A stretch of 63,187 bases of DNA, counting the filler, from Pelomyxa schiedti (taxonomy: Eukaryota; Protista; Evosea), in NCBI GenBank assembly GCA_020536535.1. It is 19 parts of 19 records of this genome, joined end to end, with 100 filler letters (N's around TTAATTAATTAA, not from the genome) between each part and the next. Parts side by side here need not be neighbours in the genome. Positions count along the whole stretch, not along the records: positions 30,993 to 45,827 come from JAHLWZ010001164.1; 18 more parts are not named here. One strand, 5' to 3'. The notes under the pieces were generated by a model, which worked only from the letters and a program-made list of their open reading frames with translations, was not told where the DNA came from and ran no database searches. Within the stretch, counting starts at the first letter, position 1. Every line of letters starts with the position of its first letter. The translations under genes were made by a program, and so were the position numbers. Shown in pieces: positions 30,893 to 45,927 of this stretch.

Positions 30893-31436
30893 NNNNNNNN
30901 NNNNNNNNNNNNNNNNNNNNNNNNNNNNNNNNNNNNTTAATTAATTAANNNNNNNNNNNNNNNNNNNNNNNNNNNNNNNNNNNNNNNNNNNNTTACTGTA
31001 TCAGTGCGATGCCAGCAGTCAATTGCCACTGTTCACAGACTCAGCCGGCGAACGTAACCCCATAGAGGCCCAGTGTTGGTCGCGCTATCGCCTCGTGCAG
31101 GGCCCTTGTGCCCATTGGTGAGACATCTGACCCTTAGGCGTCGTCATTGTGCTTTCCACTTCCCCCAGTCTCTGCCCTGTTCCAGATAGAGTGGCGATCA
31201 GCTGGAGTTTGCCTTGGTTATTTTTTTTTTTTTTGGCGTGGGTCCTGTTCTACTGGTTGGAATCCTCAAATCAGGCCTTCCTCCCCTTTGGGAATTCCCA
31301 CTGCCCTTCGTTGCACTTGTGATCCCACAGCAACCTTCCCCTTCAGCGGTATCAGCCAACTCACTGCTGTGCGTATTGTTGCCCCTGTGGTAGTTCACTG
31401 TCTGCTGCATGCTGTCGTCCTGCAGTGCCTCCCCTG

Positions 31437-31935
31437 CCTCCTTCTATCAAGGGGCAGTGTCCTCATCCTGCCATCTCCTCCTTCTTTCGAGGGGCTGACG
31501 AGGAGCAAGATTCCTTCCTCCCGCCTCTCCAGCTGTGCCTCCTCCTTATATCAAGGAGTGGTGTGTGTCCACCTCCTTCTATCAATCAAGGAGCTACCTT
31601 CCATCCTCCTTCTATCGAGGATCAGTTTCCTCCTACTTCCTCTTTCAACAAAGAGCAATGTCCTTATCCTGGTTCCTCCTTCTATCAAGGATCAGTTTTC
31701 TCCTCACACCTCCCCCTTCTATCGGGGAGTACTATCCTTGTCCTCCTTCTTCTTCTTCGATGAGCAATGTCGGAATCCCCCTCCTCCTTCTATCGAGGAG
31801 CCACCTTCCATCCTCCTTCTGTCGAGGATTGGTTTCTTCAATCAGTTTCCTCCTGCTTCCTCCTTCTATTGAGGGCAGTATCCTCCCACTTCTGTCAAGG
31901 AGCAAAACCCTTGTCTGGCCTCCTTCTCAAGGAGC
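31437..31935. repeat. Array of about 14 palindromic CCTCCTTCTATCAAGGAG-like units with variable spacers
   Basis: Unit starts at about 31437, 31477, 31541, 31572, 31605, 31636, 31675, 31712, 31742, 31783, 31812, 31859, 31885, 31919. Core CTCCTT-n5-AAGGAG. Spacing does not preserve frame. Confidence 0.85.
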
Positions 31936-32504
31936 CAGCACCTCCTGCAATCATCGTTTTTCCATTGGCCACAGGCCTGGCGCCTTCTCTCATGGTGTGG
32001 TCATGTCCGGAAGTGGATGTTGGAGTTAGTGAGGAGATGCAGAAGTTGCAGAAATGGTTTGGGAGGGAATATGTTGTTGAGTAAGGGGGTGTTGTTCCCT
32101 AAGTTCATCAGTTGTATACAGGACCACGAATTGCTTTGAGTAAATTAATTTAAAAAAGCAAACAAAAATTATGGTAGAAAGATACATCAGAATGAGACCA
32201 CTCTGAAAGAGTGGGACAACCTGTCTTTCGAATAAGTAGGAAGTCCTTGTCATGATTCACAACTTCCTCATTAAAAAAAACAACAACACTAAACCTCTGT
32301 GTCCTTAGGAACCTTATGTCCACTTGCTGTGGAGATTGTTACTGCTGCTTTTTGTTGTCCACCAAACACCTCCACTGATTTCCTAGAGTGCCGAGAGACA
32401 CTTTGGCCGAACCGGACCACAATCCAACAACGTGTGCTGTTCCGATGTCCTGTATGTAATGTATTTTGATTTTCTATCCGGCTCGATCAAGACACAGATC
32501 TATC

Positions 32505-32614
32505 GGCGGCGAAAATTGTGGTGCGAAAACTTTCATCACTGATCGTGAGACGCCAAAGTTTTCAGCAACGAAAGTTTTCGGCGACGAATGTTTTACAGAA
32601 CGAAGGTTTCTCAA
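32505..32614. repeat. 16-bp tandem repeat x4 plus related motifs
   Basis: CGCCAAAGTTTTCAGC AACGAAAGTTTTCGGC GACGAATGTTTTACAG AACGAAGGTTTCTCAA, preceded by GGCGGCGAAAATT and TGCGAAAACTTT. Confidence 0.7.
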
Positions 32615-33949
32615 CATAGGGTAGTCTATGGTGCCTACCACACTTGCCATCCCACCATCACCTCACTCCATGAGCAGCATCTTCTCCACTCCTTTGGTAT
32701 TTGCTTCCCACGGTGCTGTGCCTACTGCTGCTCTTGGTTCCCGTGCTGTTGAATGGGCTTATATCAGCACACTTACTCATCAGTTGCACCTGTGTTCCTG
32801 TGGCCGCCGTTTGTATCCTTACCAACCTGTCACCCTCACTTCTGCTCTCCCCATGGTGTTCTCATTGCACTGCTGCTCACACCTCCAGTGCCACCCTCCT
32901 GGCTGCTAGCCAAGTGCTGTAGTTGGTGTAGTACGCTGGTTGAAAATCAGTGGTCCTCAGTGTTGTATTGAATGTGGTACCAACAATTTCTGACTCGACC
33001 CATCTCCATTGGTGAGACACAGCCGATTTTTACTGGCCCATGATTCCGATTGCTTACTGAACTGTCCCCAGCTGAGTAGAGACACCATTGTCATATCACC
33101 TCCTTACCGCCTTCTAAGGTTCCAGCCATCTCTGGTTGCCTTGTGTCCTGTTTGGTGAAATCTAAGTCTGTCGATCGGAGCAGACCTCCTGTTGCCAGTG
33201 AGCTACCTGGCCCTGCCTTGCTGTCTAGGTCAACAGTCTCCTCTTCCCCTGGAGTCTTCTGGGCGGCTGACATCTTCAAATGTGCTCCCTTGAGAGCCAC
33301 TGCAGTTGATCCTGCTGTGCTGTGTCCACTGTAGTATTTGCTGGCACTGCACCACTCGAGGACAACATCGCTACGTGTTTGTCCATACTGACGAGGGGAT
33401 GATACCTTCGTTTTCCGACTCCTCGCGTTTGTTGGGCACACTCTGTTGCGTTTTTACTGTGGGCTCCCCTTGCGAATTGTTGCGTTTTCCATCGATCACC
33501 GTTTACATCTCCTCCACAAGCACGAGGCTCGCCTTCGCCTTCGTTTTCGTTTCGTTTTCGTTTTTCCTTTCGTTTTTCGCTTTGTGCTAGTCAATGACTC
33601 GCCACAGATAGTGAAGAGTCTTTCGCAGCAGTCTGCAGATTAACACAAAGAAAGAATAACATCCGGACCAGATAAAAGCTTGTTCGCTGCTAAAGTTGTT
33701 TGGCACAGCCATCCAGTGACTTCGCGTCGCTGTTCTAATCACTGATGGATTTCTGGGAAAACTACCGCGAATCTGTTGGGACCCTGAGGGAGATTCAGGC
33801 GACACCTAGAACTGATTCTAGCGCCTTTATCAGGCGGGAACAACACCATCGTAGTTGAGCAAGCAAAAGCTAAAGTAATAAACAATAAACTCTTGTGTTT
33901 GTATTCGGGCTTCTTTCTCCCTTACACAAGTAAAACAACAACCATCAAC

Positions 33950-35338
33950 ACCCCGGCACACCTCACAGTGTGGTGGTCACTATCCAAACCCAATCTACCT
34001 CGCCACACTATCGTTCAAATTTCATTTCGACACGGCCTCAGTAACGTTGCAGTCGCAATTCTGCCGCCGGTGGAACTGGCGTGCCGGTGGTTGCAAGTGA
34101 TTCCCTCCCCATTTCTAACGCTACCCTCACTCTCACTCAGCAACCACACCACAACCATAGGTTCGGGAGCCAGTGTACCTTCAAGCACGCGTGCGTGGTA
34201 TGCGGCAGCCCCGGGCACACCGCGCGGCAGGCCCACGGCGGCCTCGCCGGCCCCGCCCGCAGAGCCATGCTCACTCCCGCCGACGGCGGCCTGTTTCAGC
34301 CGCACCAGGGGCCCCTGGTCGACTCCCCCTCGGACACTACCAGCACCACAACCAGCGCCGAGTGGGACGCCGCTGCCGAGAGGGACAAGGCTGAGCAAGG
34401 GGAGGGGGAGAGGGAGAGGGAGAAGGACAGGGCGCGGGGCCTCGGGGACTTTGGCGCGTCGGTGGGGAGGCTGCGGGCCACTGGGAACGAGCACTTCAGG
34501 GAGGGGCGGTACGACGAGGCGCTGAGGTGCTACAACGCCGCGGTGTCGCGCCTGCGGGCCGTGGTCCCGCACCCCGAGGCCTACCAGCACTCATGCCAAT
34601 TGTCCGCTACTACTGCCGCTGCCGCCACTGCAACTGACTCCTCTGACTGTGCTTGTGGCGGCGACGTCGGCGCCGTAGCCGTCGGTGTCGGCGTCGGCGA
34701 TTCTACCGAGTCCCGTGCCCAGACTGGGAATGATTCTCGCTCCGAATCGCCGCGGACTGGCTGCCCTACGCCGCCACCGCCTGCGACAAGCACCGCGGAA
34801 CGCGTGAGTGACGGTGAGATGGAGATGGAGAGCGAGGGAACATCGGCGGAACATGAGCCTGTCGTGGAGTATGGCGCCATTTCACAGGCTTCTGTGTCCG
34901 TTCTGCTGTGTAACGCAGCTGCATGCTGCATTCAGTTGGGCGATCCAACAAAAGCCGCATTGTACGCTGGAAGGGCCATTGTATATGATGAATCAAACAT
35001 CAAGGCCTGGTACAGACGTGCCTGCGCCTGTATGTGTTTTTTTTTGCCGTTCTCTCTCTCTACACTGTGTGCTTTCACACAAACTCAAAAAAGATGAACA
35101 ACTGGGGAAGTACACTGAGGCGGAAAACGACTTGATGCACATACTAACAGAAGAACCACACAATTTGGCAGCACAGGCCAAACTGAGGCAGCTTCAGGAA
35201 CAATTTCATCAACGAGAGGCTACACTGTGTAGAAATATGCTATGTATTCCGGAACCGACACCCACATTGACAACAGCAAATCAAAGTGACAACCAATGTG
35301 ACAATTTGGTTGGGCACAGCATTTTTGATGATGAGTGA
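33950..35338 (+). CDS. TPR protein (FKBP/CyP40-type TPR) with N-terminal Cys/His zinc finger; start uncertain
   Basis: FCRRWNW...CTFKHACVVCGSPGH; LRATGNEHFREGRYDEALRCYNAAV; LLCNAAACCIQLG..AALYAGRAIVYDESNIKAWYRRACA; QLGKYTEAENDLMHILTEEPHN. Confidence 0.75.
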
Positions 35339-35387
35339 ATGAATGTAGAGGAAAACAATATCATATTAATATTCACGTTTTCTTGTC

Positions 35388-36404
35388 TCAAGTCCTAAAA
35401 CGGGCCTCCCTTCCTCTGTTGGCTGTAGCCTCCCTCTCTTTGTCCCTTTCTCTATCCCGCTCACGGTCTCTCTCACTGTCCCTGATTCTATTGCTCCGCG
35501 AAGGTGAGTCACGCTGTCTCATAACATCCCTGTCCCTCTCTCTGTTGTCCCTTCTGAAGTCTCTTTCACGGTTATCTCTGTCTCTATCCCCCCTTTCTCT
35601 GTCACGGTTATCTCTGTGCCTGAATTCTCTTCCATGTGGCTCATTTGATGACCTAGCGGCATCAGCAGCTCGAAGCTCGGCGGCATCAGCAATTGTAAGA
35701 CTTACATCAAGAAAATCACCAACTTCAAAATGCAATTCGTCAAGAGTCTTGTTCTCATCCTCGGAATGGCCTATTCCCCATGTGCTTCCAACCTTTTTTC
35801 AATAAGGTTATGTTGAATGTAATGAATAGGATTAGAGCGGTGTGTTTTTGTTTAGATGGTAAAAGTGACAATATTTTACCTCCTTGATTACATTTCGGCC
35901 CATTTTATCCGGATAAACAAATGCAAACCCTATTTTTGCCTCACGTCTGCGTGCCACTTCCCGTACTTCTTTTATCAACTCAGTCAATTCGCGGAGTGTT
36001 GCATCACGCCTAATAACAGTGTCAATTTCATTATCACTGCTCTATGAATCCAGTAACCATGTGTGAATCTGCAATTCGTCCTGCAGAGGCTCCTTGCCTC
36101 TCACCTGGTATTCCTCGATGGGGTGGTGGCCCCCTGCACGAGTGAAAACCCTCAATAACAAAGGGCAAGTCTATACCACCAAAGTAAACAAAACAAAGGC
36201 GTAGAGCTCGAAGTATTTAAAAAAAAAAACGAACAAAAGGCACGCGAATGACACACGAACCTTCTCGCGATCTACGTCGCCCGGTTTGAGGATCTTTCTC
36301 GACGGCACCGCAACAGAGGCTTCCGAAGTGACCGTTGACGTAGGGGCTGTAGAAGATGTAACAGCGGCACTACCACCACTCGCCAACACCGGATCTGTTT
36401 TCAT
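35388..36404 (-). CDS. SAP18: Sin3-associated protein SAP18 with RD/RS-rich C-terminal tail
   Basis: Exons give VDREK..., VFTRAGGHHPIEEYQVRGKEP..ELQIHTW, ARRREAKIGFAFVYPD, DENKTLDELHFEVGDFLDVSL. Confidence 0.92.
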
Positions 36405-36617
36405 CTTCGTGGAGCCTTTTTTTTCCTGTGATTTCAAGAAAGAGAAAATTCGCCTTGGCATGTTAGGCAAGGGATGCCAACAAAAAAAAAGGACCCTAGT
36501 ACTACATACAGGTCGGTGTGATTTTGGATACACACAAACACACAGAAAGAAAAGGAGAACAGGCAAGTTTTTTTGTTTTTGTTTTTTTACTCTGGGGAAT
36601 ATGTAACAAAGGGAGAT

Positions 36618-37120
36618 TTAGTGTCCGTGTTTCTTGTGTGCCTTCTTGGCGGCTTTCTTGGCATCGTGGGCATCGATCTTCTTCATCTTTCCCTTCTTGC
36701 TCATGTAGTATCCTGGTGGGCATCCAACAGCTATTAAAAGAAGTACGTGAGATTCAAGAAACGAGGAAGTAATAAAACACCCCTCCGCACACAGCCCCCA
36801 CCACAAAGTCAGAAAAGTACAGGGGGAGGACATACTGTTAAGGCCCATGTGCATTCCGGGAGGGGGCATGCCCATTCCCATGCCAGGTGGTGGCATCATT
36901 CCGGGCATCATGCCTGGTGGTGGCATTCCCATGCCCATGCCGGGTGGCGGCATCATTCCTGGCATCATGCCTGGTGGCGGCATGCTTCCCATCATCCCGG
37001 GTGGTGGCATTCCGGGGTATCCCATTGGTTGACCTGGCATCATGCCGGGCATGGGCTGGCCTGGCATCATTCCTGGCATTGGTTGGCCGGGCATCATTCC
37101 GGGTTGTCCAGGGTAACCTT
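36618..37120 (-). CDS. Small Pro/Gly/Met-rich protein with basic C-terminus
   Basis: PGQPMPGMM and PPPGM repeats. Final exon GCPPGYYMSKKGKMKKIDAHDAKKAAKKAHKKHGH*. Start codon not resolved. Confidence 0.65.
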
Positions 37121-37696
37121 GTTATTACACTGCGTAAGAAACGATGTTTGCTGCGTTGGTGTCATCACCGCGATTAATACGTGTTGTTATTACAAAAGCA
37201 AAAACATCGCACGAGGACCGCGAATAGGAGGAGGAAGAGGAAACGAAACAAGCGTTTTGGTTTCTTTTAGGGCGATACAACAAAAAACACAAAATTTCGT
37301 AGCCTACCGTAAGACATTGTTACTGTCGGTCTTGTTGGTTGTGGGTTTTTTGTTTAAAATGAATTTTTTTTCGGGCCCTTTTTGTGCTGTTGCTGTTACT
37401 AAACCTCCATTCTCAGGAATAGCGGTTTGTCAAACTTGATGACAAGGTTAGCCAACTGAGAGAAATAGCAGAAAACCAAAAAAGCCCCGGTTGTGCTGCC
37501 TCAGTATCCCGCGGTCCGCCGCTCCGTTCGGGGGAATCCCAACTTGGCAAGGTCTACGGCCCAAAAGGGATGCAAGGTGAATCTGAAACCGGCCTTTCGT
37601 GTGAAATCACACGGCTACGACTTTTTAAATCGAAAAAAACACCCGGCATGACACAAACTCATAAACACGACGCGACAGAAGCAATACAACACAAAG

Positions 37697-39349
37697 ATGT
37701 CTCTAGAGGCAAGCACTACTAGTGATGCGCAGCCGAAATGTTGGACTTGTGGGACGACTATACCCAAGTTGGATCACACTGTCCACAAGCAATGCAGCCG
37801 GTAGGATCCTCATTTTCTTTCCCTCTTTTTTAAAACACATTGGCAGAAGTTGTAATATAGTAGTGTTAGGATTATGTTTAACGAAAACTTTTTTTTTTTT
37901 CAAGGTGCAAGCTTGCAGTATTTTGTAGTGGGGTGTGCTTTAAGAAGGGATGGAAAGACCATAAGAAGCATTGCAATATTGTTGCTATACCAATTGACAG
38001 GGAACCAGAGTATGCTATTATGAATGAAAACTGTGATTAATAAAAGGAAATATATTTCTACTGTTGCTAACCACAACCAAAGTGCACACACCAGAGCGGC
38101 GCAAAGCAGACAGATGCAACAGGAAACTGTTGCAGCTTCTGTGCCCAAGCCACAAATTATTCACGCCAAGACCAACCCCTCTGCACCCCTTCCAGAGGGT
38201 TTTGTCTCTGCTGATACAATTACATCAGAGAATATGCCTTCAACCACCACATCTTCCTCACTCCCAGAGGAACTCACAACACCCTCTCCTACTGTCTCAA
38301 GCACCACTACCTCTTCCTCAGAGGGTTCCCAAAGAATTCTGCCAGCAACTGGAAAAGTTAATATAACTGGCGATTCTCCAACTGCCATCAAAGATCAGGC
38401 ACGTCTACAAGCCATGATTGGCTCTGGACGTGGCAGCAACATACACACCATTGCAGGAAAAACCTTGGTAGATGCCACATTGACTTCCACCGAGATTCCA
38501 GAGGTCAGAATTCCTTCAAAGCCTTAATTGTTTTACATCTGTGGTAGGGCGCTGCACTATGCTTTATCAATTGTACAGAATGCCAATATAGAATTGAGGC
38601 ACCTTCTGTGAAAATTTTCCTACAAGGCTGTGTTGGACTTAAGTTGCACATTGTGGGGAAAGTCATAACGAGCACTGTAGAGATCTTTCACTGTGAAGTA
38701 TGCAAAACCTAGAAGCAAGCTCGAATCTAACACCCTTCAAACTACAGCGTATAAAGGCTGTAATGAGTGGTGAAGTACACACAGTACAAGCCGATATGAA
38801 TCGGGACCTTGAAATAGAATTCCCTGATCAAGCCTCTTTCCGAATGATTGTTTGGGCAGGTTGCTACAACTTTAAGATTAAGGTTTGTTCCTCCATTTTG
38901 TTACAGTTTCTGACAATATCATATCAGGTCGGAGAAATGGAGCTGATTACCGGGTTTGATGTAATGAAAGGACACTACAAAAATATCCGAGAAGATATCA
39001 GTCAATTCAAAGTACCCCCATTATCTCTGCCAAATGCCCTCTCACTGAACTACAGGTGCACTTCGTGCAAAACAAGCTTATAGCTGAACGTGTTGTGCGA
39101 CTCGACAATGGCTTCCCTACTACCAAAAGGGAAGCGGACGAGTTTGACAGGTTTTTCAATGAACCGAAGCACCTATCTAGATTTTTTTAACACCCACGCA
39201 GACGCCAAGAAGAAAATATCCAAAGACGGGCCAAGGAGATGGGAATTACAATCAAAAGGAAACAACCCACTGGACCAAAGGTCGGGCGCAACGAGCCTTG
39301 TCCTTGTGGTTCCGGACAGAAGTACAAGTCCTGCTGCCTTTCTGGATAA
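37697..39349 (+). CDS. zf-MYND + low-complexity region + CAP_C/cofactor-C-like beta-helix + C-terminal SEC-C motif; multi-exon
   Basis: CWTC..QCSR|[23 protein letters not shown]; [37 protein letters not shown]|..TVQADM..IVWAG; [20 protein letters not shown]|; [20 protein letters not shown]. Confidence 0.8.
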
Positions 39350-39890
39350 CCAAGTCTGAAAGTTCAATCACCAATGTAACCAGCAAGTACAACGGCCTCA
39401 AGAGTGCCATTCAGGCATTTTTCTCCTCACCAGTTTCTGTGTGAGTTGAGGAAGCCTTGTGTACTGTTGGAGAGCTGGTTGCTTGGTGCTTATTCCTGTG
39501 AAATAATAAGATGAAAGTTTTTTTACAGCCTTGGTTTTATCTTTTCCCGTCGTGGACAAAAACCCTAAAGGACGTTTTTTTTGGTTTCCACAAACTCCCT
39601 TTACAGTAACCCCCTTCGCACCCATAATAGATCTGCGGTCCGATTAGCGTTTCCCGGAAAATCAAGTGCAGGAACCTACATCAACGCGAGAAACGACGTA
39701 ACCAGAAAAGCGGTGCCTCTTTGTGGTGCCACCTCCCAAACCAACCAAAAGCAACAAAAAAATTTGAAAGCACAGCCCTGTCAAACACCAACCAGTTTTC
39801 TTTGGACTTCTTTTTTTTTCCCCTCCCACCTGCCTCCCTTTTTTTTGGTTCTGATTGGTGCAGGGGAGTAGGCACACCTAGGAGAAGTGA

Positions 39891-42800
39891 ATGTTTTTAT
39901 CGAGGAGACATGGGTTATTGTCCAGTTCGGAGCCACTTCCACCACCCGAGTACTTGCCACCTCAGAAAGTATGTACTATTTTCGTTCATTGTCCCTTCTT
40001 TGTTGGTTTTTTTTTCCCTCACCTATCTGTCAAATGTTTATTTTTGTATTTGTAGGCAGTAGTGCCGGAGCAGGTCAACATTAGAGTCAATGGCAGACCT
40101 TTGAGAGTTGGTTATGGATGGACAATACTAAGGGCCTGCAAGGAAAATGGAATTCACATTCCTACACTCTGTCATCACCCAAGTGTTCCTCCTTTCGGGA
40201 AATGTGGAGTTTGTGTTGTTCATGTGGAGAGGGGTCACTCTTCAACATCTTTGCAATCCTCTTCTGGCGGCTCAACCCCGATTATCCCCTTGCTAACCCC
40301 ACCAAAAAGATCGCATCCACACCACTTCACTTCCCTGCTCCATCAAAAACCACAGTTTGTCATGTCATGCAAAACTCTTGTAGAGGAGGGAATGGTAATA
40401 ACTACCAACTCTGCTGCTGTTGTATATCAGTCTACTACCAATCTTGCAGAATTCTTGGGTACAAGAAGATTAGAAGGAATGCTGCCTGCCCCAGAAATTG
40501 AAGATTTACTGACGTATACCAGGGTTTGTTATCATGCAAAACTATCATTTCTCAAATGTAAAAAAAAAAAAAAAAAAAGAAATCTAGAGCAGTTAATGAC
40601 CAGCAGCAAGATTACGCAGTAGTGCGTGATCAGAGTTTATGCTGTCTATGTACACGTTGTGTTCGTGTTTGCTCAGAAATCCAGAACATGAACGTCCTCA
40701 GAATTGTATTCACTTCTCCTCTCAGTCCCATTATGTTTGAAAATGAGCTTCCTTTGCACGCAACCAGCTGCATAACATGTGGACAGTGTACCTTAGTTTG
40801 TCCTACAGGTGCTGTTTCTGAGAGATCTGATTGTGCTGTTGTTGAGAGGGAACTCGAAATGGCTTGTGCACTGGCCAAGTCAGGCAAAGAAAAGAAGATA
40901 TTCATACTTCAGACAGCACCCTCGAGCAGAGTATCTATTGGAGAGCTGATGGGTGAGGAGCCTGGAACAGATTGCACCTCGAAGCTCGTAGAAGCAGCTC
41001 ATACCATAGGCTTTGATCTGGTTTTTGACACACAATTTGCTGCTGATACCTGTGCCACTCATGAGGCTATTGAGTTGGTAGAGAGAGTGAATGCTGGAGG
41101 GCCGTTTCCTCTTTTTACCTCATGCTGTCCTGGTTGGGTGAAGTTGGTTGAAAATGTAACCTCTCCTTCTCTCTTTCGCTGATTTAATAGCAAACAGAAA
41201 TACCCGCACTTGAGGCCATTACTGTCAAAAGGAAGGTCGCCAATGATGATGCTAGGATCCATGATTAGAATGATGATGAAAAGGGACAATATACCAAGAG
41301 AAAAATATTTTGTGGTTGCACTCATGCCCTGTCTTGCTAAGAAAGAAGAAATAACACGACCGGAACTTAAGGATCCCGAGTGAGTTATTTCTGAAGTCTA
41401 TTCTTCCTTATGCTTTATGCAGAGGGAATTCTGATGTAGATGTAGTCCTCACTGTGAGAGAAATGGCTGTACTACTTAAAAAACGGATGGGATCTATGGG
41501 ATGGGGCAATTTAGGCTCTGGAAATGGTTCTTTTGATGAGCCATTTAATTTATCCAGTGGTGGTGGTACTTTATTTGCTGCTAGTGGTGGTGTTACAGTA
41601 TGTACCGTCATCTACTTTATTGGATATTTGAAAACTTCTTTTCCCTCTAAAAAAGGAAGCTTCTCTCCGTGTTGCATATTCATACCTCTCAAAGGAGAAA
41701 CTAACACCAAGTGTGTCGTCAGCCTTTGAAGAATGTCGCAGTGCTACAAAGCCAGATTCATGGTTGGAAACCAAGGTCGATGTCACTCCTGGGCATCGAC
41801 TTCACTCAATGCTCGATGTTGCAATTGTGAGTGGCACGAAAAAGATCCAAGAGTTTCTTTCTTCTGAGGGCTTGAATGACCCAGAGTCTGCAACTGAAAG
41901 GGGTGGTCACCGAAAGCACTTCGTAGAGTGCATGTGCTGCCCAGGGGGGTGCATTGGAGGTGGAGGGCAGCCAAAGTCTTTGGATGAACACATTGTTGAA
42001 AAAAGACGTTCTGCAATTTACGTTCTTGATAAGATAGCTTCAGAGAGGTCTCCATACCAAATGCAGAACAAGTTTCTGCATCATCACATTGGAGGGGTTA
42101 TGTCAGAAAAAGGGCGTGCCCTACTTGAATATGACCATCCAATGTTTTTGTCACCTAGAACAACAATGAACTTTGATGATTCTGCTTCAACAACTTGTGA
42201 AGCCTCGGCTCGTCTTTGCATCCTCTATGGCTCACAAGGAGGACTTACAGCATCTTATGCCAGAAAATTGCATTCCTTCTTCGAAAACAATTTAAATGAA
42301 CAGATTGTCATACATTCAATGGACAGGCGAGTAAGAGAACAGACACTTTTCATATGCTGACAATACTATAGGTTCCCCCTCAAGCTGCTGAACACTTGTC
42401 TCACACTAATTTTCCTTACTTCCACTTGGGCCACTGAAGAAAAATTGATGCCGTGCAACGCACAAAAATTCTTTGAATATTTGTGCAGTGTCCCATTGAA
42501 TCAACACCACAAAAAACTTGCTGGAACACGCTTTGCTGTTCTTGGATTTGGTTCAACCAAATACCACGAGGTCTGTCTGTTAGTGGAAAAGACGTTCCTG
42601 TGATAATATTTTTAGTTTTGTGGATTTGCTGTCCAATTACACACGATGCTGAGGAGATTGGGTGCTTCCCCGTTTATGGATCTTGTAAAAATCGACGTTG
42701 AACGACCTGACAAGTATTCCTCTCCCTCTAACATGCTAACTAAAAATCGCTTCCAAAAGAGGTGCCAAGCCCTTTAACCGTTGGATGCAAAGTATTACTT

Positions 42801-45800
42801 CCAGTCTCATCTCAACAAACCTTCCATCACCAAGAGTTTTATTGATTCCCTCTGTTTCTCCTGGTTTCTTCCAAATCCCCTCACTTTTTTGCTTACTCAA
42901 ACGGTCAGCAAGGCATAAAGGGGCAACACTGGTGTCTCCAGCCGGTTGCCATACTGTGACAGTAGCGAAGGTAGCGGAATACAAAACCTTGTCAAGTGCC
43001 ACAGAACACTATTTCTATGTTGAATTCACGACAGAGAAGAACTTTCTTGAGTAAAAACTCTGCTCCTTGTATCAAGCCCACTTACTGTTCCCAGTCCCGC
43101 ACCTGGTGACTACTTATATGTAATGCCCTCAAATCCAAGAGCAGAAGTAGAGCAATTCCTGAACTCTTTTTACCCAGGAATGAGCAATGTACCAATTACA
43201 ATTCTCTCTCTTTCGGGTAATACTCTCCCAGTCTGTCGAGAGATTCACAAATTATAGGAAAACCACTTGAGAGTATACCTTCACACCTCACTGTTTCACA
43301 ATTATTTGAGCAGTTTGTTGATCTTTATGGGCGACCTTCCAAAGATTTTGTTGAGCGTCTTCTTACAGCATCTGGAGAAGAAACCCAGTATGTAAAAAGC
43401 ATATTAAATATTCATCTGGTCTCCTTCTAGAATATTCACTTCCCAACCAATAGTCCTCTGGTTGGTGTGACCTTTGACCATGAGAGTTTTGTTCAGTGGG
43501 CAAAAGAACAGACTTACCTTGGGATACTCAAACAGTTTAAAAGCAACCTTGTCTCACTTGAAGTACTCCTTACAATGATTCCCACTATTTTGCCTCGGTG
43601 TTACACACCCATTCACCTCGATCCACCAAAACCCCATACTATAGCCATTTGCGTCAAAGTCATAGAGGATGGATTGTGTTCTAGATTCCTTGTAAATTCA
43701 AGTACACTGTCCGATATGTTTGTTGTACAATCTCCTTATTCACGTCTAGAAAGAGGGGACAAAATAAATGTTTATGTGACTGGATGCGAACTTCCACAGC
43801 CAATCTTCTTCCAAGACAACAAATTGCATCCCAGTCCAAAAGCACTTGCACCAGAACAAGCCTCAATGAAAGCCGTTCCCAATTTGAACCCTCCTCTTCC
43901 AATTCCAGTGAAACCAGTGGGCAGGTATCTTCGCATTTTTTCTCCAATTTCTGAAGGACAATTGTAGTGCCTCCTCTTCACCAAGAGAATCGAGTGCCAC
44001 ACCAAGAGAATCGAGTGCCACACCAAGAGAGTCAAGTACCACTCCTCGTGATGACATATTCCCACTGTCCCGTTCCGTTCAAAAGCTCACGTTTTCTAGT
44101 ATGGGTCGTGTGCCTGTGGGNNNNNNNNNNNNNNNNNNNNNNNNNNNNNNNNNNNNNNNNNNNNNNNNNNNNNNNNNNNNNNNNNNNNNNNNNNNNNNNN
44201 NNNNNNNNNNNNNNNNNNNNCACCAAGAGAATCGAGTGCCACACCAAGAGAGTCAAGTACCACTCCTCGTGATGACATATTCCCACTGTCCCGTTCCGTT
44301 CAAAAGCTCACGTTTTCTAGTATGGGTCGTGTGCCTGTGGGACTTCCAGTGAAGGAATCTTTTCACCTTACCAATAATCTGAAAGACAAGGCGAGATTTT
44401 CCATAGAGGATGTTCTCACAGCCAAATTTTCCCTCAGTTTTTATCCTCCAAATGGAGTGATAAAGTCACATTTCAGTGTTGACATACAAGCAACCCTGAC
44501 AGCCTTCTGCACTACTGTAATATCATCGGAGACCCACATTATAGCAGAATTCTCAGGGAAAACTAGCCAAACTGCTTTTCCCATTTTGGCAGAGACAAAG
44601 CTTTCTGTCAAACTGGACTTCGATGAAATCCACCGTATAGATCAAGTTGGAAAGGGGGGCTATGGGACTGTCTTCAAATCAGAATGGAGAGGACAAGATG
44701 TTGCCGTCAAGTTGTTGCACAACCAGGATCCTCTCCCTGAAGAGAAACGTGACTTTGAGAGGGAGTGTGCTGTGCTGGAGGAATTACGCAGCCCATATAT
44801 TGTAGCATTTGTTGGTTTCTGCCTCAATCCCTTGTGTATAGTCACAGAGTTCTTGCCACTCGGCAGTTTGAGCAAATATATATTTGGAAATCCTCCCTCT
44901 AGCCTCAGTGTGGAGTACAAACAAAAAGCAATGCTCAATGCTGCAACTGGAATGACATTTTTGCACAAAAGGTTATTCAAGATTTCACTGAGGATTGCAC
45001 TAACTGACACTTTTTAACTTGCAGTGGAATTATGCACAGAGATCTTAAACCGGACAACATACTTGTTGTCTCACTGGACTCTAAGCAAAGTGTTGTATGT
45101 AAATTGACCGATTTTGGTACCACTCGCGAATGCACGGAGCAAACAAAGAGGCTAACACAGGGGATAGGAAGTTTGTTTGCCTGTTCATACTATCGTCATC
45201 TAACTTATTGTTGCAGCACCTACTTTCATGTCCCCTGAAGTGTACCAGGGGGGGCAGTACTCCACACCCACTGATGTTTTCTCGTTTGCAGTACTTCTAT
45301 ATGAAGTTTTTTCTGGCATTCAGTCCTACTCAGGACCAGAATTCAGTCAGGACTGGAGTGAGTTCCCTCCGTTTTCGTCTTCCTGGTTCTAACTTCATAC
45401 AGTGATTCCGCAATATGTGATAGCTGGAAAAAGGCTGGCTGTCCCCCCGTCAGTACCGGAACGAATTGCAAATTTAATTAAAGTATGCTGGGCACAAGAC
45501 CCGCAAAAAAGACCATGTGAGCCGATCCTTCACATTTCTAATCCTAACCTCTTCCAAACAGCCTTCTCTATCATTCAGATAGAACTTGATTGCATAGCCA
45601 ACAACAAACCCCGGCACCTCTCCCTTTCACTATCACCACCCCCACATCCAACACAACAACAACCACCCGCACAATTACAACAAGAACAAGAACGAGAAAA
45701 CAGTAGCAGTAACAACAATGAACCTCACTACAACCGGCACAAACACCGCAGACCAACAGTGTCATCCTCCCCTGAAAGAACCCTAAAGGACCTCTCTTGA
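39891..45800 (+). CDS. [FeFe]-hydrogenase - flavodoxin - FAD-binding - Ig/MSP-like - TKL protein kinase fusion (about 20 exons)
   Basis: Frame stays open through manually placed introns: 39969-40055, 40514-40587, 41156-41197, 41380-41422, 41598-41655, 42327-42371 (GC-AG), 42571-42615, 42714-42759, 43051-43094, about 43217-43259, 43392-43430, 43925-43967 and four kinase introns. There is no stop between hydrogenase and kinase. Single stop at 45798-45800. Confidence 0.82.
40056..42160 (+). other. hydA: Domain: [FeFe]-hydrogenase (F-clusters + H-domain + small-subunit region)
   Basis: 2Fe-2S: TLCHH..GKCGVC..SCKT. 2x4Fe-4S: CCLCTRCVRVC and CITCGQCTLVCP. H-cluster motifs FTSCCPGW, MPCLAKKEE, ECMCCPGGCIGGGGQP. 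Also QTAPSSRVSIGE, DTQFAAD, SGGVTEASLR. Confidence 0.97.
42200..43800 (+). other. Domains: flavodoxin (FMN) + CPR/CysJ/NOS-type FAD-binding domain, without NAD(P) domain
   Basis: ILYGSQGGLTASYARKL, FLTSTW, PCNAQKFFEYL, RFAVLGFGSTKYHEFCGFA; PGDYLYVMPSN, FVDLYGRPSKDFVERL, IPTILPRCYT, GLCSRFL, GDKINVYV. Confidence 0.9.
44322..45620 (+). other. Domains: Ig/MSP-like pre-kinase domain + TKL-type kinase (Entamoeba TMK-like)
   Basis: AETKLSVKLDFDEI, VGKGGYGTV, VAVK, ERE, HRDLKPDN, DFG, GIGTPTFMSPE, DVFSF, CWAQDPQKRP. All catalytic residues present. Confidence 0.95.
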
Positions 45801-45927
45801 GGAGGACTTCATTATGTACAAAAAAAANNNNNNNNNNNNNNNNNNNNNNNNNNNNNNNNNNNNNNNNNNNNTTAATTAATTAANNNNNNNNNNNNNNNNN
45901 NNNNNNNNNNNNNNNNNNNNNNNNNNN

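What the first reader, a model, noticed from the sequence alone, without database searches (positions are those of the whole stretch)
43431..43970. The NAD(P)H-binding domain of the diflavin reductase is missing, cut where it should begin
Seen: after PRCYT, GLCSRFL and GDKINVYVTGCELP the frame runs into a Pro-rich linker (QPIFFQDNKLHPSPKALAP...). There is no GxGTGxAP motif anywhere before the kinase. Established: in CPR/CysJ/NOS the FAD domain ends ..F.LP.. and is followed at once by PIIMIGPGTGIAPF. Inference: without a pyridine-nucleotide outlet the FMN/FAD arm may act as a redox store or conformational switch (open/closed FMN-domain motion as in CPR) rather than as a catalytic NAD(P)H reductase. 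This supports a sensory role.
Basis: partly seen in the sequence, partly recalled or inferred. Interest (0 to 1): 0.75.

Follow-up and report, generated by a model that had tools for sequence, protein, structure and literature searches.

The report
Hydrogenase-flavoprotein-kinase fusion lacking NAD(P)H domain
In the anaerobic amoeba Pelomyxa schiedti, a hydrogen-converting enzyme carries a two-flavin arm that has lost its NAD(P)H-binding domain and is joined instead to a protein kinase; relatives share this layout, so it looks like a hydrogen or redox sensor rather than the NADH-burning enzyme it was published as.

Summary
The piece is a Pelomyxa schiedti contig. It carries one 19-exon gene, 39891-45800 on the + strand, equal to Pelo_16670 / KAH3732501.1, "[FeFe]-hydrogenase, partial". 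Spliced RNA contigs confirm the exons.

The protein reads: 2Fe-2S, two 4Fe-4S, H-cluster, flavodoxin (FMN), connecting plus FAD barrel, Ser/Pro linker, Ig-like domain, protein kinase. It has about 1590 residues.

No NAD(P)H domain exists in any frame of the contig. Pfam finds none. A purpose-built HMM scores at most 2.7 bits here, against 74-124 bits in held-out canonical fusions. The folded arm aligns to rat CPR residues 71-517, which is where the NADPH domain would begin.

The 100-N gap is an artefact. It hides nothing and only truncated the public annotation.

The truncation is ancestral. It defines a monophyletic Archamoebae clade (Pelomyxa, Mastigamoeba, Mastigella, environmental sequences). 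Its output modules differ: kinase, RasGEF, or another domain.

The arm is under purifying selection and keeps its flavin-binding motifs.

Best reading: a hydrogen/redox-poise sensor. This is inferred, not shown. Published work counts this gene as an NADH-dependent metabolic hydrogenase.

The parts
39891..45800 (+). Whole coding region of the gene (Pelo_16670 / KAH3732501.1, extended here). It has 19 exons and 18 introns of 41-87 nt (17 GT..AG, one GC..AG). The product is 1589 aa, or 1596 aa with a third PRESSAT unit.
   Evidence: Spliced RNA contigs. The splice model gives one open frame. The first 1139 aa are identical to P0001. The model is collinear with paralogue P0017, which has the same exon count and near-identical exon lengths.
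40056..41973 (+). 2Fe-2S (Fer2_4), two 4Fe-4S and the H-cluster domain. Motifs: L1 TSCCPGW 41117-41137, L2 MPCLAKKEE 41324-41350, L3 ECMCCPGGCIGGGGQP 41926-41973.
   Evidence: Pfam Fer2_4, Fer4 and Fe_hyd_lg_C. Motif coordinates.
42217..42713 (+). Flavodoxin (FMN) domain. Loops: YGSQGGLTAS 42217-42255, LTSTWATEE 42415-42441, LGFGSTKYHEF 42541-42618.
   Evidence: Pfam Flavodoxin_1, 60.9 bits in P0001. Alignment. The model aligns to the NDOR1 FMN domain with Z 24.5 and rmsd 1.6 A over 153 residues.
42760..43796 (+). Connecting domain plus FAD-binding barrel (exons 9-14). It ends at ...GDKINVYVTGCELP.
   Evidence: Pfam FAD_binding_1, 69.2 bits, profile positions 6-185 of 222. The AF2 model has pLDDT 86. 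It aligns to rat CPR residues 71-517.
43454..43701 (+). Exon 13, inside the finding. It holds PRCYTPIH (43593-43616) and GLCSRFL (43671-43691).
   Evidence: RNA joints 43387>43454 and 43701>43750. Coordinates.
43702..43749 (+).
   Evidence: RNA contig of X4 skips it. The paralogue has an intron at the same place.
43750..43924 (+). Exon 14: the last barrel strand, GDKINVYVTGCELP (43755-43796), then the start of the Pro-rich linker (from 43797). This is the point where an NAD(P)H domain would begin.
43925..43967 (+). 43-nt GT..AG intron between the end of the arm and the linker exon.
   Evidence: RNA joint 43922>43966, cut +2.
43968..44300 (+). Ser/Pro/Thr-rich linker with 21-nt PRESSAT tandem units (43979-44041). 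Both RNA and DNA k-mer contigs break here.
44121..44220 (.). 100-N scaffold gap. It is an artefact: the 121 nt on each side (44000-44120 and 44221-44341) are identical overlapping contig ends.
   Evidence: Exact identity. X3 DNA contig record 13 joins across it. The paralogue has one uninterrupted 807-nt exon here.
44289..44603 (+). Ig-like (ASH / MSP / Cep192-D6-like) domain between linker and kinase.
   Evidence: Weak Pfam hits HYDIN_VesB_CFA65-like_Ig, Cep192_D6 and ASH. Conserved in kinase-type and Mastigella-type relatives.
44625..45605 (+). Protein kinase domain of PK_Tyr_Ser-Thr type, with all catalytic motifs: GKGGYG, VAVK, HRDLKPDN 45035-45058, DFG 45110-45130, SPE.
   Evidence: Pfam. 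Coordinates. Four RNA-confirmed introns.

Best explanation
Shown: the finding lies at the C-terminal edge of a truncated diflavin arm inside one expressed 19-exon gene of Pelomyxa schiedti.

The protein's domain order is:
- 2Fe-2S, two 4Fe-4S and a fully canonical group-A H-cluster
- a flavodoxin (FMN) domain
- a connecting domain plus FAD barrel
- no NAD(P)H domain
- a Ser/Pro linker
- an Ig-like domain
- an active-looking protein kinase

Also shown: the NAD(P)H domain was lost once, in an ancestor of a clade of Archamoebae hydrogenases. That clade descends from classical hydrogenase-CysJ fusions. The remaining input module was kept under selection and joined to different signalling outputs.

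Inferred mechanism:
1. The hydrogenase equilibrates with ambient H2, and/or with ferredoxin through the N-terminal FeS chain.
2. It loads or unloads electrons onto FMN and FAD.
3. The flavins have no hydride outlet, so their redox state reports H2 / redox poise. O2 or other oxidants could reset it.
4. A redox-linked change in the arm, such as the open/closed FMN-domain movement known from CPR, alters kinase activity. In paralogues it would alter Ras-GEF activity instead.

On this reading the protein is a eukaryotic, single-polypeptide counterpart of bacterial hydrogen-sensing hydrogenase/kinase systems. It is not an NAD(P)H-dependent H2-producing enzyme.
For: One gene, expressed:
- Spliced X4 contigs give GT..AG joints through the arm and the kinase.
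- One open frame runs 39891-45800.
- Paralogue P0017 (1593 aa) has the same 19-exon structure, with linker, Ig-like domain and kinase N-lobe in a single exon.
- Environmental relatives P0026 and P0027 are uninterrupted 1602- and 1692-aa ORFs on 4.9-5.3 kb contigs.

No NAD domain. The fold ends at the CPR 517/519 boundary.

A clade with swapped outputs, none carrying PF00175:
- kinase: P0017, P0003, P0004, P0006, P0009, P0018, P0026, P0027, P0031, P0033
- RasGEF: P0007
- Ig-like plus an unassigned C-terminal region: P0005, P0011, P0030

The clade is monophyletic (SH-aLRT 100). It sits on a 1.51 substitutions/site stem, nested among CysJ-fused hydrogenases.

The arm is not vestigial:
- dN is 0.097 (flavodoxin) and 0.144 (FAD). 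Compare 0.118 (hydrogenase), 0.140 (kinase), 0.417 (linker) and 0.403 (tail).
- Columns invariant across the truncated and canonical arms include the S-T of the STW/STY loop, G-x-G-x-x-x-Y, R-x-Y and the G of GxCS.

The hydrogenase motifs L1, L2 and L3 are all canonical. The proton-relay residues, read by eye against CpI numbering recalled from memory, also look intact.

Biological context: P. schiedti depends on a methanogen that keeps H2 low (PMC10579272).
Against: - No biochemical data exist. Flavin content, H2 reactivity and kinase regulation are all untested.
- The hydrogenase looks like a competent catalyst, not like bacterial sensory HydS. In HydS, as I recall, the proton-relay Cys and the Met residues are replaced.
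- Canonical relatives have about 8 extra residues just before GLCS that the truncated arms lack. From memory, that CPR hairpin contacts the ADP part of FAD, so FAD binding could be altered.
- The RNA contigs do not bridge the 21-nt tandem repeat at 43979-44041. In this locus, a single transcript across the arm-kinase junction rests on the open frame and on relatives.
- The direction of control could be the reverse, with the kinase regulating the enzyme.
- The docking test of arm against Ig-like domain plus kinase gave no verdict.
Confidence: 0.55

Rival explanations
1. It is still a metabolic hydrogenase. The FMN/FAD arm passes electrons to or from a partner other than a pyridine nucleotide, for example O2, a quinone, ferredoxin/flavodoxin or another protein. 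The kinase is a regulator or scaffold of the enzyme (autophosphorylation, localisation) rather than the output of a sensor.
For: The H-cluster motifs are fully canonical, and the proton-relay residues look intact when read by eye against CpI numbering from memory. The N-terminal FeS chain typical of ferredoxin-linked enzymes is present. The flavin motifs are conserved.
Against: The same arm is joined to RasGEF and to other non-kinase modules. That fits an input module with interchangeable outputs better than an enzyme with a dedicated regulator. The clade sits on a very long stem after the domain loss. No acceptor site is identifiable.
Confidence: 0.25
2. The arm is a vestige or mere spacer. 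Flavin binding is lost, and the hydrogenase domain alone (or nothing) matters.
For: The match to solved diflavin reductases is weak at sequence level (E about 0.7). Ser is changed to Thr in RxYS. There is a shortened segment before GLCS.
Against: dN of the arm equals that of the hydrogenase and kinase, and is 3-4 times lower than in linker or tail. The cofactor-contact columns are invariant across the clade and its canonical relatives. The AF2 fold is confident, with pLDDT 86.
Confidence: 0.07
3. NAD(P)H is still used. Either a separately encoded NAD-binding domain docks on the FAD barrel in trans, or there is a non-canonical site.
For: None was found here. The idea is only that the exposed face of the FAD barrel must be covered by something.
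Against: Nothing NAD-domain-like is on the contig. The loss is old and clade-wide. P. schiedti keeps a separate complete hydrogenase-CysJ, P0039, with GLGTGIAPF and PF00175.
Confidence: 0.05
4. It is an assembly or annotation artefact. On this view the NAD domain sits in the N gap, or two neighbouring genes were read as one.
For: There is a 100-N gap between arm and kinase. The public protein is annotated as partial and stops at the gap. The RNA contigs break at the repeat.
Against: The gap flanks are an exact 121-nt overlap. A DNA contig crosses the gap. DNA contigs break at the same repeat, so the break is a k-mer effect. The paralogue and transcript-derived relatives from other species show the same uninterrupted architecture.
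Confidence: 0.02

Closest known systems
Hydrogenase-CysJ fusions of anaerobic protists (Trichomonas vaginalis, Pygsuia biforma, Stygiella incarcerata; here P0039 of P. schiedti, P0034, P0037, P0042)
   Same: Both have an N-terminal 2Fe-2S, two 4Fe-4S and a group-A H-cluster, followed by a flavodoxin and an FAD domain. The truncated clade nests among these fusions in the hydrogenase tree.
   Different: The classical fusions continue into ...PP.dp..P(I/V)(I/V)M.G.GTGIAPF and a full NAD(P)H domain, and have Fe_hyd_SSU. This protein stops at the barrel, lacks PF00175 and PF02256, and carries a linker, an Ig-like domain and a kinase instead.
Diflavin reductases (CPR, CysJ / SiR-FP, NOS reductase, NDOR1/Tah18)
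   Same: FMN domain, connecting domain and FAD barrel share the fold. Foldseek E is about 1e-25. VIA Z is 21-24. The model aligns to rat CPR 71-517, E. coli SiR-FP 64-441 and nNOS 750-1249.
   Different: There is no NAD(P)H domain. That means no catalytic Cys/Asp and no C-terminal stacking aromatic, which belong to that domain (my knowledge of CPR). Sequence identity is only 16-24%. The motifs are RxYT-P-(I/L)-H and STW instead of RxYS-IASS and ST(Y/F).
Bacterial hydrogen-sensing systems: group C sensory [FeFe]-hydrogenase HydS (PAS domain, neighbouring kinases/phosphatases) and regulatory [NiFe]-hydrogenase HoxBC/HupUV with histidine kinase HoxJ/HupT (my knowledge; HydS in PMC10055695, listed)
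   Same: The proposed logic is the same: a hydrogenase whose redox state is read out by a signalling protein rather than used for metabolism.
   Different: There is no homology of the signalling parts. Here the coupler is a truncated diflavin arm, not a PAS domain. The output is a eukaryotic-type kinase or RasGEF in the same polypeptide. The H-cluster surroundings are catalytic-type, not HydS-type.
Published reading of this very gene: 'long' NuoG-HydA-CysJ hydrogenases of P. schiedti (Treitli et al. 2023, PMC10579272)
   Same: It is the same protein: KAH3732501.1 = Pelo_16670. Its paralogue KAH3758981.1 = Pelo_9198. Both are listed as HYD, energy metabolism.
   Different: [quoted passage not shown] That holds for P0039. 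It does not hold for Pelo_16670, P0017 or Pelo_9198, which lack the domain and carry a kinase or RasGEF.

Membership tests
Diflavin reductase (CPR/CysJ/NOS-reductase type) | Flavodoxin-like FMN domain with phosphate loop and two aromatic-bearing loops | tested here: met
   Pfam Flavodoxin_1, 60.9 bits. The YGSQxGxTA, STW and GFGSxxY loops are conserved. Z is 24.5 to the NDOR1 FMN domain.
Diflavin reductase (CPR/CysJ/NOS-reductase type) | Connecting domain plus FAD-binding barrel with RxY(S/T) and GxxS/T motifs | tested here: met
   FAD_binding_1, 69.2 bits. R-x-Y is present in 14 of 14 aligned truncated arms, and the G of GxCS in 14 of 14. The model aligns to CPR 71-517. Actual FAD binding is not testable here.
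Diflavin reductase (CPR/CysJ/NOS-reductase type) | C-terminal NAD(P)H-binding domain (GxGTGxAP and following motifs) | tested here: not met
   No PF00175. The custom HMM scores at most 2.7 bits in all six frames, against 74-124 bits in positive controls. There is no regex match.
Group A [FeFe]-hydrogenase | H-cluster motifs L1 TSCCPxW, L2 MPCxxKxxE, L3 ExMxCxxGCxxGGGQP, and F-cluster cysteines | tested here: met
   All three motifs and two CxxCxxCxxxC(P) motifs are present. Fe_hyd_lg_C scores 224 bits. Activity and maturation are not testable here.
Group A [FeFe]-hydrogenase | C-terminal small-subunit-like segment (Fe_hyd_SSU, PF02256), as in the canonical CysJ fusions | tested here: not met
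   PF02256 is absent from every member of the truncated clade. It is present in P0039, P0034 and P0037.
Sensory group C [FeFe]-hydrogenase (HydS) | PAS domain, and replacement of the proton-relay Cys and the Met residues near the H-cluster (from memory) | tested here: not met
   No PAS hit. TSCCP, MPC and ECMxC are all kept. It may work like HydS but is not a member.
Eukaryotic protein kinase (PK_Tyr_Ser-Thr / TKL-like) | Gly loop, VAIK Lys, HRD, DFG and APE-like motifs | tested here: met
   PF07714 at 68 bits on the N-lobe exon, plus hits on later exons. GKGGYG, VAVK, HRDLKPDN, DFG and SPE are present.

The most novel reading that the evidence does not exclude
Archamoebae possess a family of single-chain hydrogen (or H2/O2 redox-poise) sensors. 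In each, a working [FeFe]-hydrogenase charges a dead-end FMN/FAD arm. The redox state of that arm switches a kinase, a Ras-GEF or another output. In Pelomyxa this could let the amoeba monitor the H2 drawdown by its methanogenic endosymbionts, or steer its behaviour along H2/O2 gradients. I am not aware of any H2-sensing signalling protein described in a eukaryote.
Probability: 0.4. Interest if true: 0.9.

Novelty: new variant of a known kind. Interest (0 to 1): 0.75.

Why it matters
1. It corrects a published metabolic model. At least three of the "long" P. schiedti hydrogenases (Pelo_16670, its 81%-identical paralogue P0017, and Pelo_9198) cannot oxidise NAD(P)H through their CysJ-like arm. 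The argument that NADH-dependent H2 formation by these enzymes explains the dependence on the methanogen needs revisiting. Only P0039-type enzymes qualify.

2. It defines a conserved, modular input domain: hydrogenase plus a flavin arm without a nucleotide site. That domain is joined to kinase, RasGEF and other outputs. This makes eukaryotic H2/redox sensing directly testable in culturable relatives such as Mastigamoeba balamuthi.

3. A natural diflavin arm without its NADPH domain is a useful system for asking what the FMN/FAD pair can do on its own.

4. The public entry KAH3732501.1 is truncated by an artefactual gap and can be completed.

Tried and rejected
- phmmer of the FAD exon against PDB sequences gave only E about 0.7. 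The sequence alone is too divergent, so structure comparison was needed.
- Complex prediction of the arm (with FAD and FMN) against the Ig-like domain plus kinase of P0017 gave no verdict, with scores 0.14 and 0.11. This is not evidence either way.
- dN/dS ratios are not reliable because dS is saturated (1.9-3.0, or not computable). Only the dN comparison between domains is used.
- The hit P0010 (axolotl, 4555 aa) is a mesothelin-like repeat protein and was dismissed as spurious.
- Nyvltova et al. 2015 (PMC4379409), on the Mastigamoeba hydrogenases, is not held. I cannot exclude that the domain make-up of M. balamuthi hydrogenases 5 and 9 was noted there.
- Literature searches for hydrogenase with kinase domain, RasGEF or hydrogen sensing in Archamoebae found no description of the fusion.
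- The upstream ORFs at 38024-39360 have no Pfam hit and were not pursued.
- The number of PRESSAT units is unresolved. It is 2 in the X3 contig and 3 in the window's left flank and the X1/X2 unitigs.
Full report
**What the piece is.** The 14,835-base piece (30993-45827) is a Pelomyxa schiedti contig (Archamoebae). A phmmer search with the exon under the finding returned a 99%-identical protein, P0001. This is NCBI KAH3732501.1, "[FeFe]-hydrogenase, partial [Pelomyxa schiedti]", recorded on one contig of exactly 14,835 bases. The ORF pattern is that of an intron-rich eukaryotic gene.

**Gene structure and expression.** Four public runs of one sample hold the sequence.
- Three runs give unspliced contigs, so they are DNA.
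- Run X4 gives contigs that skip 41-66-nt segments bounded by GT..AG (one GC..AG). These can only come from RNA.

Using these joints, I placed intron 2 (40524-40579) from the X4 contig's skipped letters together with its GT..AG ends. I placed introns 4 and 5 by splice sites and reading frame alone. Intron 1 comes from the public annotation. Together they give one open frame from ATG 39891 to the stop at 45798-45800, with 19 exons.

Inside the finding:
- 43431-43453 is intronic.
- Exon 13 is 43454-43701.
- Exon 14 is 43750-43924.
- 43925-43967 is a 43-nt intron.

**The gap.** The public protein stops at ...GRVPVG, at the 100-N gap.
- The 121 nt on each side of the gap are identical.
- A DNA contig of run X3 runs straight across.
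- The frame continues into an Ig-like domain and a kinase.

The gap is therefore a scaffolding artefact and hides nothing. RNA and DNA contigs both break at the 21-nt PRESSAT tandem repeat (43979-44041). That is a k-mer effect, not a transcript end.

The paralogue P0017 (1593 aa, 75% identical overall) lies on another contig, L001. It has the same 19 exons with near-identical lengths. Its linker, Ig-like domain and kinase N-lobe sit in one uninterrupted 807-nt exon.

**Is the NAD(P)H domain really absent?** Yes, on four lines of evidence.
- Pfam finds Fer2_4, Fer4, Fe_hyd_lg_C, Flavodoxin_1, FAD_binding_1 (to about position 185-203 of 222) and the kinase, but never NAD_binding_1.
- I built an HMM from the NAD domains of nine canonical relatives. 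It scored 74-124 bits on four held-out hydrogenase-CysJ fusions. Its best score was 2.7 bits among 550 six-frame pieces of the whole contig, and at most 0.2 bits on the proteins of the truncated clade. No GxGTGxAP-like string exists.
- Introns are too short to hide exons.
- An AlphaFold2 model of residues 672-1095 (pLDDT 86, pTM 0.85) matches NOS reductase and CPR (Foldseek E about 1e-25). Model residues 1-407 align to rat CPR residues 71-517 and to E. coli SiR-FP 64-441. From my knowledge of the CPR structure, the NADPH domain starts at about residue 519.

In canonical relatives from the same search, the barrel is followed at once by P(I/V)(I/V)M.GLGTGIAPF.

**A family, not an accident.** Only ten proteins among 1.84 billion representatives match the FAD exon. 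Word-based searches with P0001 added more. The set comprises:
- three P. schiedti proteins: this one, P0017 with a kinase, and P0007 = KAH3758981.1 with RasGEF_N+RasGEF
- Mastigamoeba balamuthi hydrogenases 5 and 9, and gene model g192 with a kinase
- Mastigella eilhardi transcripts, and P0030 (an EukProt transcript of unnamed source), each with an Ig-like domain and an unassigned ~600-residue C-terminus
- about ten environmental sequences, most with a kinase

None of them has PF00175 or PF02256.

On a tree of the hydrogenase core they form one clade (SH-aLRT 100). The clade sits on a 1.51 substitutions/site stem, nested among eukaryotic CysJ-fused hydrogenases that do have the NAD domain (quick search, no bootstrap). 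The most economical reading is one ancestral loss, followed by exchange of output modules.

**Is the arm alive?**
- Against paralogue P0017, dN is 0.097 (flavodoxin) and 0.144 (FAD part). Compare 0.118 (hydrogenase) and 0.140 (kinase), but 0.417 (linker) and 0.403 (tail). dS is saturated.
- Columns invariant across truncated and canonical arms are the cofactor-contact positions: the S-T of the STW/STY loop, GxGxxxY, RxY and the G of GxCS.
STW occurs in 14 of 14 arms. R-x-Y occurs in 14 of 14, followed by T in 11 of 14, usually as YTP(I/L)H.
- From my own knowledge, Trp is the usual FMN-stacking residue of flavodoxins, and RxYTxxS is the FAD motif of cytochrome b5 reductase. Neither variant therefore implies loss of flavin.
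- One caveat: canonical relatives have about 8 extra residues just before GLCS that the truncated arms lack. This might affect the ADP part of FAD (from memory, untested).

**Hydrogenase and kinase parts.**
- L1 TSCCPGW, L2 MPCLAKKEE and L3 ECMCCPGGCIGGGGQP are canonical.
- Residues matching the CpI proton relay (C299, E279, S319, E282, R286) look conserved. I read these by eye against CpI numbering recalled from memory.
- This is a catalytic-type enzyme, unlike bacterial sensory HydS.
- The kinase has all catalytic motifs.

**Mechanism.**
- Shown: a conserved hydrogenase plus FMN/FAD input without a nucleotide site, covalently joined to signalling outputs.
- Inferred: electrons from H2 (or ferredoxin) reach the flavins and go no further. 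The flavin redox state then reports H2/redox poise and, through a conformational change of the arm, controls the kinase. I give this 0.55.
- Main rival (0.25): a metabolic enzyme with a non-nucleotide partner, with the kinase as its regulator.
- Minor rivals: a vestigial arm (0.07), a trans-acting NAD domain (0.05) and an artefact (0.02).
- The docking test gave no verdict.

**Comparison with the literature.**
- Treitli et al. 2023 (PMC10579272) describe the "long" P. schiedti hydrogenases as NuoG-HydA-CysJ. [quoted passage not shown]
- Their supplement lists KAH3732501.1 = Pelo_16670 and KAH3758981.1 = Pelo_9198 as HYD, energy metabolism.
- The statement holds for P0039, which has RAYSIASS, GLGTGIAPF and PF00175. 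It does not hold for the three clade members.
- Zahonova et al. 2022 and 2023, and the M. balamuthi genome paper, do not mention flavodoxin, CysJ, kinase or RasGEF fusions. Further searches found nothing either.
- Nyvltova et al. 2015 could not be read.

**Verdict.**
- It is a new variant of known kinds: hydrogenase-CysJ fusions and sensory hydrogenases.
- It has a direct consequence for a published metabolic model and offers clear experiments.

Noticed in passing
window 44000-44341: A 100-N scaffold gap lies between two identical 121-nt contig ends. It made the public protein KAH3732501.1 'partial' and cut off its Ig-like and kinase domains. The number of 21-nt PRESSAT units (2 or 3) differs between contigs.
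   Followed up: yes
window 42327-42371: One of the 18 introns is GC..AG rather than GT..AG. The RNA joint supports it.
   Followed up: partly
window 40230-40370 (within exon 2): A Ser/Pro-rich insertion of about 40 residues sits inside the 2Fe-2S domain, between the CxxC pair and the last Cys. The RNA contig is continuous over it, so it is coding. Paralogue P0007 has a much longer insertion at the same place.
   Followed up: partly
window 39891-39968 (exon 1) and relatives P0019, P0026, P0027, P0030, P0031: A short N-terminal motif, PPxP(D/E)YLP(P/E)Q, is conserved across the clade ahead of the 2Fe-2S domain. Its function is unknown; it could be a docking or phosphorylation site.
   Followed up: no
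P0009 (environmental, 1397 aa): One clade member has both a degenerate H-cluster L2 motif (SSC instead of MPC) and a degenerate kinase (HGS for HRD, SGY for DFG). It looks like a doubly inactivated relative.
   Followed up: no
P0080 (Anaeramoeba flamelloides, 1151 aa): This is a hydrogenase with a flavodoxin domain and WD40/beta-propeller Pfam hits. Fusion of hydrogenases to non-catalytic modules may therefore also occur outside Archamoebae.
   Followed up: no
window 40517, 43634, 45224: Run X3 shows single-base differences (T>C, C>A, T>G) against the window. By my reading, 43634 is a synonymous third position of a Pro codon in the FAD exon. This could be allelic or cell-to-cell variation.
   Followed up: partly
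window 34045-35335 (+) and 36621-37121 (-): Upstream neighbours include a GC-rich (up to 64%) gene whose translation reads like TPR repeats by eye. On the other strand there is an ORF rich in Pro/Gly/Met repeats (PPPGMM...).
   Followed up: no
window 40558-40579: A run of about 19 A's lies in the 3' part of intron 2. The read tool masked this stretch as a repeat.
   Followed up: no
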